Part shown: positions 1 through 5,488 of the stretch, one piece after another | How positions within the stretch are numbered: the stretch's first letter is position 1 | How the letters are laid out: every line of letters starts with the position of its first letter | DNA from: Ruditapes philippinarum | Lineage: Eukaryota | Length of the DNA stretch: 64,000 bases | NCBI RefSeq assembly: GCF_026571515.1 | Contig: NW_026864022.1 | Span: 124,001-188,000, forward strand | Reading direction: 5' to 3' | Made by a program: the position numbers and the translations under genes | The notes under the pieces: model-generated | What the model was told of the DNA's origin: nothing | What the model saw: only the letters and a program-made list of their open reading frames with translations | Database searches by the model: none

Positions 1-3000
1 AGGCATCCACTAACAGGGAGCTGTCCTGTATCCTGTCAATAAACATTAATGATTTATATAGAAAGATACTGGGATGTAAGTAAAAGTAAACATTGCATGT
101 ATGCATTAAAACATTTTTACATCGTTTATATAGTTACGTTAAAATTTGCTAAAATTTAGACCCGAAAATGTGAACGCACTCAAAACATTAGATATTTTCA
201 TTTTTTAATGTGTGCTGTCTTATCAGCAAGATATAAAGAGATCTATATATCACTTGTTGGGAAAACTATATTTCCTAGAATGACACGAAACAAGAAAAAA
301 AATCTTATGAATACGATCTATAAGTTAATATTTATCAAACTTTTGAAGTACCTTTATCAAATAAATTTTTCGTTTTGATTACTGCAGTTGCTTTGAATTT
401 GGAACGATCCTTTAGATATAAAAAAAAGGTATTCGTTTTGTTAAAAATCAAAGATTAGCCAATACCAAAACCAGGGTATATTAAGGGTCAGGTGGAACCG
501 TAGAACATATATAGCAATATACATATGCAGATAATATGCGGGGGTGGGCGGGGGACATAGAAAGGAAATAATATAACTGAAGTCTCACCACAAAACTGAT
601 AAATCGAATGAAATCAACATCCATTTGTGTGGATTTATTGTAAATGTTTGTGCAAACTAAAATGTAAAACAATAAATGTTGTTTTTTTAAATTCATTTTT
701 AAATGTTTCTTTAAACGTCTCCTCGAAACTAAATGTAAATTAAATAAGATTATGATTTTAATACATGGGACTAATGTCAGATTTCAATTCATGGAGTCAA
801 TGACAGATTTTAATATATGAAGTCAATATCGGATTTTATTACACGGTGACAATGTCTGATTTTATCACAGCATTGTGACCAATATTGGACTTTAAAACAT
901 TTAACATAGGATCAATTTCAGATTTTAATAATGAGGACAAAGTCAGATTTTATTACAGTCTGAGACATTGTCAGATTTGTTATATCATTGGGACAATGTC
1001 AAATTTATAATACAGAATATGGATAATGTCAGATTTTGTTACACCTTGAGAATGTCAGACTTTAGTACAACACGGGGTCAAACAATTTGAAACAGACGTC
1101 AAAAATAAATACCTCAACGCCTTTCATATAATGGCGGAACTCCGGACAGACGAACGCACTTCCGGCATAAGCAGCGTCTATATGCAGCCAAATATCATTC
1201 TCTTTACCTATCATATTAAAAAATCTTGAATTATTTGATTCAGAGAAAACTAATTAAATTAATCTATATCCTACTTTTAGTGGTTGATTAAGCCAAATAT
1301 CAACGTTTCAACGTTTAAATCAGATGTATCAAAGCGCTGAAGGCACCGATTTGGTACACAAAAATAATGTTAGCCAGTTAATTTTGTTTTGTGTGCATTT
1401 TCGTTTGCTTTGTTCGTATTAGTCGATAACGATTTTTCATCATCATTAATTTTTATTTGAATTTATATTTTAATTCTTGTAGTGGCAATGCCATAGACGT
1501 GTATAATCAACCGACTGTCGAGCTTCGTATCGATTGATTCGAAGGTATGAACACTATTTTTGACAAATGTTCGAGAAAAAAAGTCTCGAAAATAACATGT
1601 CTTAATCATGGATCGTTCTGAAATTTCTAAAATTATTTGGATTCTGCAAACACTCGCGCATCAAAATGTCTAATCTTATAGTAATATGACTTCACATGTT
1701 TCGTTTTGTAGAAATAAGTTGAAATTCTAACATATTGGTCCGATTTCATCCAATCTATCAAACGCACACGATCCAGTGGTTCCGAGAGAGGCACACATCT
1801 AAAATTTTAAAAAAAGTTAGTGACTGAGAAATAAGTGTATAAAACAAAACATTGCGAGGTAAATAATATGGTGATAATTGAACGAGAAAATATTGTTTAC
1901 GTACATGTATACAGCTTCAACAGTGTAAATCAAAACGATATAAAGAATGTATTTAATTTGTATATATGTCGTGTTGTGTCTGTTGTGTTAAATATTATTA
2001 TGTTAGGTAATGTCATTTTAGGCTGCCGTTACTTTACGTTACGTAATGTTACGTTATGTTATGTTATGTTATTTTGTGTTAAATTATGTTCTGTTCAGAA
2101 TGTCCTTTTCTTTATTTGGCTGATTTTGGACATATTAACAAAATAAAACGTCAGTCACAAATGATTTACATGTTAACATACAATTGTATCTTTGAAAAAA
2201 TCAACCTACAAAAAATGGAATTTTCCCTTCTGCTTTGTCTTTTTCAATTTGTTGTTTAAGGAGGTCACCATGGAGACTGAACTTCTCGTCACTTTGTAAT
2301 TTTACCATGGTAACAGAACCGAGTAACCCGGATCTATGAACCGAAGAGTTCGCCTAAAAATTAATAAACAAACACACTTGATTAAATTCAATTCCACTGC
2401 TCTTTATATACTCTTTCATTATTATTTTAATCTCTCAATGTTGAACACCATCAATTTTGTTCGCCATGGGATTATATTTCAATATTTGATATTGCTTACT
2501 AGCATACATGTATAATTATATGGTTAATGGCTTTAACGGCTGAAGTTCGTTTACTAGTACTTGTTTTCACCAACACCACCACCAAAAACAACAACAATCA
2601 ATCAATAACGTTGTCTTTAATATACAGAATACATCTATTATTAATAGAATGTAAAAAAAACTTTATATTGTGGAAATGAGTGCCTATGGTTTTTAAATAA
2701 AATGATTGTAAGAAAACTCCAGCACACATTAATTAATTGTTTGTAAGATAGAAAAATGGTACCTGATCTGATGTGTATCCAACCAACTTTGATATAATTT
2801 CCAATTCATCCAACGCCGGGTTCTGTGATTTAAGTTTTGTCACCATTTTATTCCTTGCAGCTAACAAACACAGGAACACAGTCTCGCTGGCTGTCGTCTG
2901 GAGAAACAAATATGTTACAATATATTATACAGTTTTTGATAGTTTCCTTGACAATCCTTTTCAAAATTATAGATTAGCTTTTATTTTTTAAAAAAAGAGT

Positions 3001-5488
3001 TGTCCGTAAAACAGCGCGCTCGGCTATTCTTAGTTCTTGACACTGTAAGAATAGGGGCACAACTTTGTGTTAAAGTGTTACTCAGAGTTATGGGACCTAT
3101 GCCAATTATGCTAGGTAATCACAGAGAAGAAGTGTGTTAAGTTTCAACTCGTTCCCTTCTTTGGTTTTGGTGACTCCAACTTGCATGTGAATACCTTAAT
3201 CTAAGTGTGAGATAAAATAGCTGCTCTTATAAATTTGAATTGGAAAGTAAATTTAAACTACAACACAAATCGACGTCTGTCTGTGCCGGAATTACCTGTA
3301 TGACGCCGCCACCCTTGCCTTTCCCACAATGCAAGAACTGTTCCGGAAGTGAAATCATTTTGCCAAGCCAGTCTGTAGTAATCATCTCTAGCTCGGTACA
3401 GGCTGGACTGGCTGCCTGAAATAGGGGATAGAACAAACAAATGAAATGTTCATAAAAACATATTGACATAGGCCATTTAATGTCGCATCTTTTATTTTCG
3501 GGTATCTTTTTTCACCAAACATACTGTAAGATTCCCTGTTAATTATTTGTTTTCCGAATCTGAATAACCTAATGACCTAATGATGTATTTGACCTATGTG
3601 CCTTGTCGAAGCAAATTAAATCATAGAAACTTTTTCTAGTTTAGTGTCCTTTCACTATTTTGTTTGGAGACTCGTATTCGTCTCAAACTTAAATGAGCCG
3701 CGTCACGACAAAACCAACATAGTGCGTTTGTGACCAGCATGGATCCAGACCAGCCTGCGCATCCGCTGCTGTTCGCTATCAGTTTAACTACTTGTTATGG
3801 GGTTTGTAAGCGAACAGCATGGATCCCGATCAGACTGCGCGGATGCGCAGGCTGGTCTGGATCCATGCTGGTCGCAAACCCATTATGTTGGTTTTGTGGT
3901 GACGCGGCTCACATAGAAAACGTTTCAACTTTCAAATCTGTTATCTAGGACAAAATGTTGATGCTCAAAGCTAAATTCTGAGATATTGTTGTTTTCTTTC
4001 AGAATTTCGTAGAGGGATTGCCCATACATAGAACAATATCTAACTTGTAGTAAATGTCCTAACATTTAGTTTGACTTTTCTGTTATCAATAATAATTACC
4101 CAGGAGAAACCTATACAACCAATGGCGTCCGACAACATATCACCAAGGATGGATGGGAAGGAATTACCAGCAGCATAGTAGGCATGGAAGTATGGACTGT
4201 GCCAATGTGTTATCTGAAATACAGATATCTTTTTTAATAATTCACATCTGAAAGTGATTCAAGTGATAATTTTAAATTCATAGACATTGTATTTATGTAA
4301 TGATGGCATTTCCAACTTACATTTTTAAGCTGGCTTATTTAAATGAATATTGCAACTAGATTTGTTCTAGATAAACAATTTCCCGATTATATATATAATA
4401 GTGACTTTTTTACAGAGCGTCTTTCTTATTATAGAGGGAAAATTCCGACAAATAGGGCGCGTAAATCATCAAAGTAGAAATTGCTTTTATCATTTTATAC
4501 TGGAACGTTTTATTCTGCTTTCATTTTGAAATAAGACTTTTTAACTAAAACTTTCTTAAGATATGGCTGTAAGAATATGAATATAGTGTAACTGTATACA
4601 GTTCTTTGAAATTTCTATAGCCTGTTTCACCAGTTATAGAACAAACGACAATTTTTAGCAAATCTAGCAAATCTAACCCAATACAGTGATTTTTTAAATA
4701 TTTATTAGAAATACAAAAGATTTTCTTACCCCAGGCATTATGACCCTCTCTATGTCTTTCATTACTTCAGAAAATTCTTCCGGCTTTTCCGGGGCTTCAT
4801 CTGGTATAAGTTTCTGAAGTAAAAAGCCTTGCAAAGTTCTTTTACCCTTGACCTTGGTTTTAGGTCAAATTACATAGCCTATAAGTAATCTTTTATTTCG
4901 TGCATAGGAGATCAATATCGCGATCCAAGGCGTTTGAGTGGCGTTGAAAATCCTGCTTTAAGGTTGCAAGAGTGCGGGTCCCTTATTTAGCTTAATTAAT
5001 GAAAGGTCCTAATTGGGCCTGGATCCAGATTTAATAGAAAAAAAAGCACATGCGCAGTCAATGAATAGTTTATAGCTTTTAAATTATCAAATTTGGCCTA
5101 CTTTTCATGACTTCTTTTCATATAAGCATTTATTCACATTATCTGGATTTTTGTAAGTTTGTCTGAGTGCATTTCAGCATATCATCAAAGTTCAGATAGG
5201 TACAAGGGCAAATACAAAAGTACTAATGTACGCAGAGGACATAACTCTCAAAAAAAAAACATTTATGCCAGGATTATTAGTTTATGTCAAAATCTTCTCT
5301 TTTGATTTGCTTCGATCGTTATCATTTCTAAAATAAGTATCAGTACTGTTTAATGCGCAGTATTTACTAACCTTCAAGTAGCCAGGTTTTACCCTGTGTA
5401 CGACGGGTCTTTCCCGAATCTCCTTCAAATAGTCTGCAATATAATCAACCATCTCTCGGCCATATTTCCGGAATCCTTCCGCGTCCAT
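1..5488 (-). CDS. DDC: Aromatic L-amino-acid decarboxylase family protein (DDC-like, possibly an aldehyde synthase), 3'-truncated by the window edge
   Basis: Coding exons with GT-AG boundaries and a continuous frame: 5488-5372, 4813-4730, 4213-4100, 3415-3296, 2897-2763, 2353-2210, 1798-1732, 1207-1113, 656-589, 32-<1. Translation contains [74 protein letters not shown] and the PLP lysine motif NPHKW (K303). The symbol denotes the family; exact orthology is not established. Confidence 0.93.
760..1080. repeat. Degenerate ~28-30 bp minisatellite in a DDC-like intron
   Basis: About 11 diverged copies of a unit resembling GACAATGTCAGATTTTAATAC. Confidence 0.7.
3695..3910. mobile_element. Palindromic MITE family A, copy 1
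   Basis: Termini GAGCCGCGTCACGACAAAACCAACAT / ATGTTGGTTTTGTGGTGACGCGGCTC; the whole element folds into a hairpin. Confidence 0.9.

What the first reader, a model, noticed from the sequence alone, without database searches (positions are those of the whole stretch)
2348..4177. Non-insect DDC-family enzyme with the aldehyde-synthase (DHPAAS/DOPAL synthase) signature Tyr80 + Asn192
Seen: the spliced protein is colinear with DDC numbering (PLP lysine at K303). Residue 192 is Asn (codon AAC, + strand 2348-2350; YTSDQ|ANSSVHR rather than the usual AHSSVE), and residues 79-80 are Tyr-Tyr (FHAYY, versus Tyr-Phe in DDC). Established: His192 stacks on PLP in DDC, TDC and HDC. In insect DHPAA synthase (alpha-methyldopa-resistant protein), Asn192 together with Tyr80 switches the reaction from decarboxylation to decarboxylation-oxidative deamination, giving a reactive catechol aldehyde plus H2O2 used to cross-link flexible cuticle. 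Inference: this apparently molluscan gene may be an unrecognised aromatic aldehyde synthase, either convergent or ancient. It could act in tanning of periostracum, ligament or byssus, or in defence. Automated pipelines would likely label it plain DDC.
Basis: partly seen in the sequence, partly recalled or inferred. Interest (0 to 1): 0.88.

Follow-up and report, generated by a model that had tools for sequence, protein, structure and literature searches.

The report
Mollusc DOPA-decarboxylase paralogue with aldehyde-synthase asparagine
The Manila clam has an intact, expressed relative of DOPA decarboxylase whose PLP-stacking histidine is an asparagine, the change that turns such enzymes into aldehyde- and peroxide-makers in insects and plants; every bivalve and gastropod member of its family that I sampled has the same change, and none has been assayed.

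Summary
[quoted passage not shown] It is identical to RefSeq XP_060564972.1, "aromatic-L-amino-acid decarboxylase-like" of Ruditapes philippinarum. It has Tyr79-Tyr80, Asn192 (AAC, window 2348-2350), Lys303 and Tyr332.

Spliced cDNA contigs from two independent studies match exons 3-8 exactly. Neither carries the base change that would make codon 192 His.

Asn192 is not a private oddity. All 15 aligned members of a mollusc clade have it, plus 15 further members of their 90% clusters that cover the site. The clade includes venerid clams, Dreissena, Mytilus, scallops, Pinctada, Tegillarca, Haliotis and Littorina. All 39 canonical DDCs and 6 HDCs compared have His. One Batillaria model inside the clade has His192.

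The clade also changes the substrate loop (Gly78, Ala81, Ala82) and carries a C-terminal extension. Tyr80 is not diagnostic.

The ML tree separates the clade from insect DHPAAS, but an AU test does not reject a single origin.

Best reading: a mollusc-wide aromatic aldehyde synthase, or a bifunctional enzyme, labelled as plain DDC. Substrate, products and tissue role are untested. I found no paper describing it.

The parts
5372..5488 (-). Exon 1, coding part (Met1-Lys39). The 5' UTR lies further upstream and was not mapped.
   Evidence: ORF and GT donor; matches residues 1-39 of P0274.
4730..4813 (-). Exon 2 (residues 40-67)
   Evidence: AG/GT borders; P0274 residues 40-67.
4100..4213 (-). Exon 3 (residues 68-105): substrate loop ...[14 protein letters not shown]. 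Tyr79 is at 4178-4180, Tyr80 at 4175-4177, Ala81-Ala82 follow.
   Evidence: Aligns to DDC residues 68-105. Transcript contigs of X15 and X17 end exactly at its borders (L013 4719-4833).
3694..3911 (.). MITE-like repeat inside intron 3 (73-nt inverted arms). Not part of the gene's function.
   Evidence: Inverted repeat, 95% complementary. Summed contig depth of 10^5-10^6 in all runs (bins 4201-4600 of L013).
3296..3415 (-). Exon 4 (residues 106-145)
   Evidence: Borders; transcript pieces at L013 3916-4034.
2763..2897 (-). Exon 5 (residues 146-190; Ser149 is the phosphate-binding residue)
   Evidence: Borders; transcript pieces at L013 3382-3517.
2210..2353 (-). Exon 6 (residues 191-238), small catalytic loop
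   Evidence: Borders. Aligns to DDC 193-239 and DHPAAS 192-237. Transcript pieces at L013 2830-2972.
2348..2350 (-). Codon 192, AAC = Asn (His in DDC, HDC and TDC)
   Evidence: No T>G change at L013:2970 in either transcript contig. Asn in all 15 clade members aligned and in 15 more cluster members.
1732..1798 (-). Exon 7 (residues 239-261, ...LGTTG; Thr246, Gly247)
   Evidence: Borders. The record coordinates of X17 contig 8 leave exactly 69 nt between exons 6 and 8.
1113..1207 (-). Exon 8 (residues 261-292; HIDAAYAG with Asp271)
   Evidence: Borders; transcript pieces at L013 1732-1831.
589..656 (-). Exon 9 (residues 293-315; Asn300, His302, PLP-lysine Lys303 at 624-626)
1..32 (-). Start of exon 10 (residues 315-345). 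The exon runs on to 58 bases beyond the window start and holds Val328, Pro330, Ile331, Tyr332. Exons 11-13 and the stop lie 511 to 1673 bases beyond the window start (contig C12509:122327-123489).
   Evidence: The exon 11 borders match transcript contigs (L013 11-109).

Best explanation
This is the Manila clam member of a mollusc-wide paralogue family of DOPA decarboxylase. It is an active, dimeric PLP enzyme of the group II decarboxylase fold. The small-loop histidine that stacks on PLP and helps protonate the decarboxylated intermediate has been Asn since before bivalves and gastropods split.

The inferred mechanism follows insect DHPAAS and plant His-to-Asn aldehyde synthases. The aromatic L-amino acid forms the external aldimine on Lys303-PLP and loses CO2. 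The carbanion or quinonoid is then not efficiently protonated. It reacts with O2, held by Asn192 and Tyr332, and gives an aromatic acetaldehyde, NH3 and H2O2, with at most a minor amine side-product.

Shown here: gene structure, expression, the residue, its conservation, and retention of all PLP and catalytic residues. Inferred: the aldehyde-synthase chemistry. Unknown: the substrate and the tissue role. The DDC residues Pro81-Thr82 that hold the catechol are Ala-Ala here, so the substrate may not be L-DOPA. Tanning of periostracum, ligament or byssus, or peroxide-based defence, are guesses.
For: 1. The gene is intact with 13 exons, identical to XP_060564972.1, and matches PF00282 at 525 bits.
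2. Spliced transcripts occur in two studies.
3. Asn192 is in 15/15 aligned clade members from 7 named bivalve genera and 2 named gastropod genera (Haliotis, Littorina), against His in 39/39 DDC and 6/6 HDC. 15 more cluster members from Mercenaria, Ylistrum, four Mytilus species, three further Haliotis species and Littorina (three unnamed transcript-derived Mytilus-like sequences among them) also have Asn.
4. Lys303, Asp271, His302, Asn300, Thr246 and Tyr332 are kept in every aligned member, and Ser149 and Gly352 in nearly all (one broken Pecten model at 149; Ser352 in one Littorina copy). This looks like purifying selection on an active enzyme.
5. Clade-specific substitutions sit beside known active-site residues: 78, 81, 82, 152, 154, 192, 198, 296 and 298.
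6. Gly247, Tyr432 and Val164 are shared with insect DHPAAS and are rare in DDC.
7. In the literature, Asn192 is the main determinant of DHPAAS versus DDC activity. Asn192His takes B. mori DHPAAS from 95% to 22% aldehyde synthase (PMC6494836). N192L and Y332F abolish H2O2 and DHPAA formation (PMC13651850). The same His-to-Asn change marks natural plant aldehyde synthases and makes poppy TyDC bifunctional (bioRxiv 10.1101/404970).
8. The genome also holds a canonical-type DDC gene on another contig, so this copy is not needed for amine synthesis.
Against: No enzyme of this clade has been assayed for aldehyde or H2O2. The Meretrix orthologue was deposited as 'dopa decarboxylase'.

His-to-Asn alone leaves decarboxylase activity in poppy TyDC and about 5% in B. 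mori DHPAAS.

Features linked to the insect oxygen tunnel are not shared. Residue 330 is Pro, as in DDC, and R330P lowers DmDHPAAS kcat about five-fold. Most clade members have DDC-like Tyr79-Phe80.

The protein is closer to Drosophila DDC (661 bits) than to Drosophila DHPAAS (533 bits).

One clade member, the Batillaria model KAK7479113.1, has His192.

Coverage is low in the one raw RNA run laid (about 1-fold with 4% of the run read), and the tissue is unknown.
Confidence: 0.55

Rival explanations
1. It is an ordinary decarboxylase that makes an amine but has a changed substrate preference. Asn192 is tolerated, and the remodelled loop (Gly78, Ala81, Ala82) retunes specificity toward something other than DOPA.
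For: His-to-Asn poppy TyDC still decarboxylates. Thr82-to-Ala is also the state in HDC and in the clam's TDC-like gene. Tyr332, the proton donor for decarboxylation, is kept. Pro330 and Tyr79-Phe80 are DDC-like in most members. The Meretrix orthologue was named dopa decarboxylase by its depositors.
Against: Every natural Asn192-type AAAD that the papers read here report as assayed is an aldehyde synthase: insect DHPAAS and the plant enzyme EgPAAS. His192 is otherwise invariant in 45 of 45 DDC and HDC sequences compared. Strict conservation of Asn across deeply diverged molluscs argues for a selected new chemistry rather than tolerance.
Confidence: 0.3
2. The mollusc clade and insect DHPAAS are one ancient lineage: a single His-to-Asn event before protostomes diverged, followed by loss in most phyla, rather than convergence.
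For: The AU test does not reject a tree that joins the two Asn clades (delta lnL 21.6, p-AU 0.24). Consensus site patterns are balanced, with 6 sites grouping by phylum and 5 by function. Gly247, Tyr432 and Val164 are shared. With HDC as root, the mollusc clade branches outside all bilaterian DDCs.
Against: The ML tree under LG+C20, and the interim tree under LG+F+G4, nest insect DHPAAS with insect DDC (SH-aLRT 96) and keep the mollusc clade apart (SH-aLRT 100). A 2026 survey reports DHPAAS absent from non-insect arthropods (PMC13651850). No annelid, brachiopod, nemertean, chiton or deuterostome Asn192 member appeared among the 120 best relatives. A tree placing the clade with mollusc DDCs fits as well as the free tree (p-AU 0.55).
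Confidence: 0.2
3. It is an artefact or a dead gene: an assembly error at codon 192, or a pseudoenzyme that no longer turns over substrate.
For: The same assembly has a corrupted, homopolymer-inflated stretch in the other DDC-like gene.
Against: The window's gene lies in clean sequence, is spliced in cDNA, and carries A at the first base of codon 192 in two transcript assemblies. Orthologues in other species have Asn. All PLP-binding and catalytic residues are conserved.
Confidence: 0.02

Closest known systems
Insect 3,4-dihydroxyphenylacetaldehyde synthase (DHPAAS; the amd / alpha-methyldopa-resistant protein; PDB 6jrl)
   Same: It has the same fold and numbering, and Asn at 192 in place of the PLP-stacking His. 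Tyr332 is kept. This clam protein has the Tyr79-Tyr80 pair of the crystallised Drosophila enzyme. Trp71, Ile101, Phe103 and the Leu-Gly of the 350s loop, which line the insect tunnel, are all present. Gly247 and Tyr432 are shared.
   Different: It is not nested with insect DDC in the tree. Residue 330 is Pro, not Arg. Residues 81-82 are Ala-Ala, not Pro-Thr or Pro-Ala. Tyr80 is not conserved in the clade. It has a C-terminal extension of about 50-60 residues with a conserved Pro-x-Ile-Asp-Ile-Asp motif. It scores 533 bits to 6jrl against 661 to Drosophila DDC. Its activity is untested.
Canonical DOPA / aromatic L-amino acid decarboxylase (PDB 3k40, 1js3, 3rbf)
   Same: This is the closest solved relative, about 58-61% identical, with the same exon-level colinearity. 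All PLP residues and the catalytic-loop Tyr are shared.
   Different: His192 is Asn. Pro81-Thr82 is Ala-Ala, Ala78 is Gly in the clade (Ala in this clam), and Ser296 and Asn298 are changed. It forms a separate, well-supported mollusc clade. It lies on a different contig or chromosome from the canonical DDC in Ruditapes, Dreissena, Pecten, Haliotis and Mytilus, judged from the contig lengths listed.
[quoted passage not shown] Eucalyptus EgPAAS)
   Same: They carry the same single-residue switch at the same structural position, with the large-loop Tyr retained.
   Different: Plant AAADs are a separate radiation, scoring 360-440 bits to the plant structures. Their substrates are Phe or Tyr, used for volatiles and phenylethanoids.

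Membership tests
Group II PLP-dependent decarboxylases, AAAD branch (Pfam PF00282) | Match to the Pyridoxal_deC profile above its cut-off | tested here: met
   525 bits against a cut-off of 27, residues 35-412.
Group II PLP-dependent decarboxylases, AAAD branch (Pfam PF00282) | PLP lysine in NPHKW, Asp271, His302, Asn300, Ser149, Thr246 and the catalytic-loop Tyr332 | tested here: met
   All are present in the clam protein. Across the clade the only departures seen are a broken Pecten model at 149.
Canonical DDC (EC 4.1.1.28) | His192 stacking on PLP | tested here: not met
   Asn192.
Canonical DDC (EC 4.1.1.28) | Pro81-Thr82 catechol-binding loop | tested here: not met
   Ala81-Ala82 here. Ala81 is in 15/15 and Ala82 in 13/15 clade members, against Pro and Thr in 35/39 DDCs.
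Canonical DDC (EC 4.1.1.28) | Falls inside the bilaterian DDC clade | tested here: inconclusive
   The ML tree puts the clade outside all DDCs (support 93-100). A tree joining it to mollusc DDCs is not rejected (p-AU 0.55).
Insect DHPAAS | Asn192 | tested here: met
Insect DHPAAS | Phe79-Tyr80 (or Tyr79-Tyr80) motif | tested here: inconclusive
   Tyr-Tyr occurs in this clam, Meretrix, Mercenaria and one Littorina copy, while the rest of the clade has Tyr-Phe. His192 DDCs of Mya, Mactra and Haliotis also have Tyr-Tyr.
Insect DHPAAS | Arg330 in the ordered 320-350 region | tested here: not met
   Pro330 in all clade members. Arg is in four of the five insect Asn192 sequences used in the tree and conservation analysis.
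Insect DHPAAS | Descent from the insect Ddc duplication | tested here: inconclusive
   The tree separates them. The AU test does not reject one clade (p 0.24).
Insect DHPAAS | Converts L-DOPA plus O2 to DHPAA, CO2, NH3 and H2O2 | not testable with these tools
   Needs an enzyme assay.
Aromatic aldehyde synthases, His-to-Asn mechanistic class (function, not descent) | Small-loop His replaced by Asn with the large-loop Tyr kept | tested here: met
   Asn192 and Tyr332. The class is defined in bioRxiv 10.1101/404970.

The most novel reading that the evidence does not exclude
Molluscs have their own family of aromatic aldehyde synthases, dating from before bivalves and gastropods split. These are His192Asn paralogues of DDC with a remodelled substrate loop. 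They would make a reactive aromatic aldehyde plus H2O2 for cross-linking of secreted matrices (periostracum, ligament, byssus) or for haemocyte or hepatopancreas defence. Aldehyde-based sclerotisation chemistry would then not be an insect invention.
Probability: 0.3. Interest if true: 0.8.

Novelty: new variant of a known kind. Interest (0 to 1): 0.64.

Why it matters
A 2026 paper presents DHPAAS as insect-specific and builds a selective-insecticide rationale on that (PMC13651850). A conserved Asn192 family in bivalves and gastropods would be a further animal lineage with the same catalytic switch. It would offer a natural experiment on how PLP decarboxylases become oxygen-using aldehyde synthases, here with Pro330 and an Ala-Ala substrate loop. 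It also raises a non-target question for DHPAAS inhibitors in aquaculture species.

The family also gives mollusc biomaterial and immunity research a concrete, testable candidate source of free reactive catechol aldehyde and H2O2.

Database annotation currently hides the family under 'aromatic-L-amino-acid decarboxylase-like'. Expression studies that read it as a dopamine-synthesis marker may therefore be misinterpreting it.

Tried and rejected
- **Representative search with exon 6** returned mostly exon-sized fragments without taxa. It was useful only to show other Asn-type exons.
- **Joined model.** I did not search with my own joined spliced model. Exons were searched one by one by reference.
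- **Alignment of all 13 exons with a Haliotis HDC** (A1) was scrambled by MAFFT and dropped.
- **Search with the HDC** listed only HDCs, but it revealed the species through a contig length.
- **treekit's AU test** under the mixture model did not finish in three runs. I replaced it with an IQ-TREE LG+G4 test.
- **Ultrafast-bootstrap run** did not finish. Only its interim topology is used.
- **Codon 192 of the canonical DDC-like gene on C1338** lies in a homopolymer-inflated stretch and I could not read it reliably. No clean second copy exists in the assembly.
- **Scallop 'CfDDC' paper** (PMC3076384: 560 aa, 1.65 ng dopamine per h per mg, methyldopa lowers haemocyte ROS). I could not show it belongs to this clade, because its glycine-rich motif is in none of my sequences. 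It is not used as evidence.
- **Scallop mantle proteomics hit A0A210QV28** (PMC9641012) is not the accession of the Mizuhopecten Asn-type protein, which is A0A210R4Z3.
- **Not run:** structure prediction, fold search and complex prediction. They return no coordinates, and the sequence alignment to solved DDC and DHPAAS already fixes residue 192.

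
Full report
**What is in the sequence**

The finding lies in a gene on the minus strand. Six-frame translation and splice-site inspection give 13 exons with canonical GT-AG borders:

| Exon | Window coordinates |
|---|---|
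| E1 | 5372-5488 |
| E2 | 4730-4813 |
| E3 | 4100-4213 |
| E4 | 3296-3415 |
| E5 | 2763-2897 |
| E6 | 2210-2353 |
| E7 | 1732-1798 |
| E8 | 1113-1207 |
| E9 | 589-656 |
| E10 | from 32 to 58 bases beyond the window start |
| E11-E13 | 511-1673 bases beyond the window start, on the same contig |

The window is G000:C12509:124001-188000.

Exon 6 starts GCG AAC, so codon 192 is AAC (+ strand GTT at 2348-2350). The exon aligns without gaps to DDC residues 193-239, and its Asn pairs with Asn192 of Drosophila DHPAAS 6jrl. Exon 3 aligns to residues 68-105 and gives Tyr79-Tyr80. NPHKW puts the PLP lysine at 303. The catalytic-loop Tyr332 (DPIYLRH) lies just beyond the window and is present.

**Identity of the gene**

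A search with a Haliotis HDC listed a Ruditapes philippinarum HDC on a contig of 99,163 bp, which is the length of G000 contig C5238.

I then built a profile from a Limulus DDC-like protein with four of the window's exons as separate rows (A2). It returned as top hit P0274, 'aromatic-L-amino-acid decarboxylase-like [Ruditapes philippinarum]', 532 aa, on a contig of 304,567 bp. That is the length of C12509.

All 13 exon translations occur in it, one after another. Its accession is XP_060564972.1. It matches Pfam PF00282 at 525 bits.

**Expression and the codon in reads**

I laid four runs on 6 kb of the gene. Contigs of two runs from different studies (X15, X17) are spliced exactly at the modelled borders of exons 3, 4, 5, 6, 8 and 11. 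One 1,196-nt contig carries exons 3-8 in continuous record coordinates, with 69 nt left for exon 7. The gene is therefore transcribed and spliced as modelled.

A His codon would need T>G at L013:2970. Each of the two runs has a single T>G place on the whole stretch, and it is listed at 3419. Both transcripts therefore start codon 192 with A.

There are three limits. 63 difference rows were not shown. The independent DNA run X5 has one unlisted T>G. Depth in the raw RNA run was only about 1-fold, with 4% of the run read.

**Other genes of the family in this genome**

A Pfam search of the whole assembly and exon-wise tblastn find four AAAD-type loci:

- This gene, on C12509.
- An HDC-like gene on C5238, with His192 and NPSKW.
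- A TDC-like gene on C3138, with His192 and NPNKW.
- A canonical-type DDC on C1338.

The C1338 exons 8-13 resemble the DDCs of Mya and Mactra. Its exons 4-6 lie in a homopolymer-inflated, evidently uncorrected stretch of the assembly, so its residue 192 is unreadable. Its exon 3 also reads Tyr79-Tyr80.

**Relatives**

With P0274 as query, scores fall roughly stepwise. Two insect models, a fused one from Phaedon and a 635-aa one from Cyphomyrmex, intrude because of their size.

- The closest relatives are Meretrix 86%, an unnamed transcript 76%, Dreissena 74%, Mytilus 72%, Mizuhopecten 70%, Haliotis 69%, Pecten 69%, Tegillarca 69%, Pinctada 65% and Littorina 62% and 60%.
- After these come canonical DDCs of all phyla, at 61% or less.

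All 15 members of this group have Asn192. All 39 canonical DDCs and 6 HDCs in the same alignment have His. Fifteen more members of the 90% clusters also have Asn: Mercenaria, Ylistrum, four Mytilus species (including three unnamed transcript-derived sequences), three further Haliotis species and Littorina.

Positions that are fixed in the group and different in DDC are 31, 78, 81, 82, 151, 152, 154, 192, 198, 280, 296, 298, 434 and 462. Nine of them (78, 81, 82, 152, 154, 192, 198, 296, 298) sit next to known active-site residues: Thr82, Ser149, His192 and Asn300. That these neighbours are active-site residues is established knowledge from the DDC and DHPAAS structures, quoted.

Lys303, Asp271, His302, Asn300, Thr246, Tyr332, Val328 and Pro330 are kept throughout. 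Ser149 and Gly352 are kept in nearly all.

Tyr80 is not a marker. Most members have Tyr79-Phe80, and His192 DDCs of Mya, Mactra and Haliotis have Tyr-Tyr.

The group carries a C-terminal extension with a conserved Pro-x-Ile-Asp-Ile-Asp motif of unknown role.

One sequence placed inside the group, a partial Batillaria model, has His192 and Ala198. It may be a chimeric model or a reversal.

**Origin**

I built a maximum-likelihood tree of 68 sequences (LG+C20 PMSF, HDC as outgroup).

- The mollusc group is one clade (SH-aLRT 100), sister to all bilaterian DDCs (93).
- The insect Asn192 sequences form their own clade (100), joined to insect DDC (96).
- The interim tree of an unfinished LG+F+G4 run has the same arrangement.

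The Asn-type gene and the canonical DDC lie on contigs or chromosomes of different length in Ruditapes, Dreissena, Pecten, Haliotis and Mytilus. This differs from the Ddc-amd tandem of insects, which I cite from my own knowledge.

The question is not closed, for three reasons.

- Under LG+G4, a tree that forces the mollusc and insect Asn clades together costs 21.6 lnL and is not rejected (p-AU 0.24). A tree that places the clade with mollusc DDCs fits as well as the free tree (p-AU 0.55).
- Consensus site patterns are balanced: 6 sites group by phylum, 5 by function and 2 otherwise.
- Val164, Gly247 and Tyr432 are shared by both Asn clades and are rare in DDC.

What is settled is that the substitution is old within molluscs, since it predates the bivalve-gastropod split. 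Independent origin from insects is favoured but not proven.

**How it most likely works**

- In B. mori DHPAAS, Asn192His lowers the aldehyde-synthase share from 95% to 22%. The triple mutant at 79, 80 and 192 lowers it to 6% (PMC6494836).
- In Drosophila DHPAAS, N192L and Y332F abolish H2O2 and DHPAA formation. O2 is modelled between the intermediate, Asn192 and Tyr332 (PMC13651850).
- In plants the same His-to-Asn change marks natural aldehyde synthases and makes poppy TyDC bifunctional (bioRxiv 10.1101/404970).

An enzyme that keeps every PLP and loop residue, and has held Asn192 in every sampled bivalve and gastropod lineage, therefore most likely carries out decarboxylation-dependent oxidative deamination. 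The products would be an aromatic acetaldehyde, CO2, NH3 and H2O2.

This is inference. Against it stand Pro330, the DDC-like Tyr-Phe in most members, and the residual decarboxylase activity of His-to-Asn enzymes.

Ala81-Ala82 replaces the Pro-Thr that contacts the catechol. The substrate may therefore differ from L-DOPA, and I cannot name it.

**Known or new**

Full-text searches found no paper that links aldehyde synthase, DOPAL synthase, DHPAAS or dihydroxyphenylacetaldehyde synthesis to molluscs. The 2026 paper states that DHPAAS is insect-specific, but it surveyed arthropods and vertebrates only. Databases call these proteins DDC or AADC-like.

I file the gene as a new variant of a known kind: the His-to-Asn class of AAAD-derived aldehyde synthases, not a member of the insect DHPAAS family.

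**Verdict**

Interest is 0.64.

Noticed in passing
G000 contig C1338, about 110,900-112,600 and 115,700-116,400 (loci L011/L012): The clam's canonical-type DDC gene is interrupted by stretches in which nearly every base is doubled or tripled (homopolymer-inflated, uncorrected long-read sequence). Exons 4-6 and part of the 5' end are unreadable there. The gene also has Tyr79-Tyr80 and Ala81-Ala82 in its clean exon 3.
   Followed up: partly
window 3694-3911 (intron 3 of the gene): A MITE-like element with 73-nt inverted arms (95% complementary). Summed contig depth there reaches 10^5-10^6 in every run, so it is an extremely abundant repeat family of this genome. Similar sequences recur in translations of the neighbouring contig stretches.
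   Followed up: partly
protein P0418 (Batillaria attramentaria KAK7479113.1, partial): It sits inside the mollusc Asn192 clade and shares its loop residues (Gly78, Ala81, Ala82, Thr296, Ser298), but it has His192 and Ala198 in the exon-6 region. It may be a chimeric gene model or a true reversal.
   Followed up: no
protein P0373 (Vollenhovia emeryi, 'aromatic-L-amino-acid decarboxylase-like isoform X2'): This ant protein is nested among hymenopteran DDCs, not in the DHPAAS clade. It carries both Asn192 and Phe at the catalytic-loop Tyr332 position, so both known aldehyde-synthase switches occur in one protein.
   Followed up: no
C-terminal 60-100 residues of P0274, P0275, P0278, P0280, P0393, P0394 and P0396: The mollusc clade has a C-terminal extension absent from DDC, with a conserved short motif (Lys/Tyr-x-Pro-x-Ile-Asp/Asn-Ile-Asp, often followed by Ser-Pro). 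No Pfam family matches it.
   Followed up: partly
L013 5030-5879 (window about 4410-5260, introns 1 and 2): The cDNA assemblies X15 and X17 also hold unspliced contigs across introns 1-2, at about a third of the depth of the spliced contig in X15 (similar depths in X17). This could be pre-mRNA or genomic carry-over.
   Followed up: no
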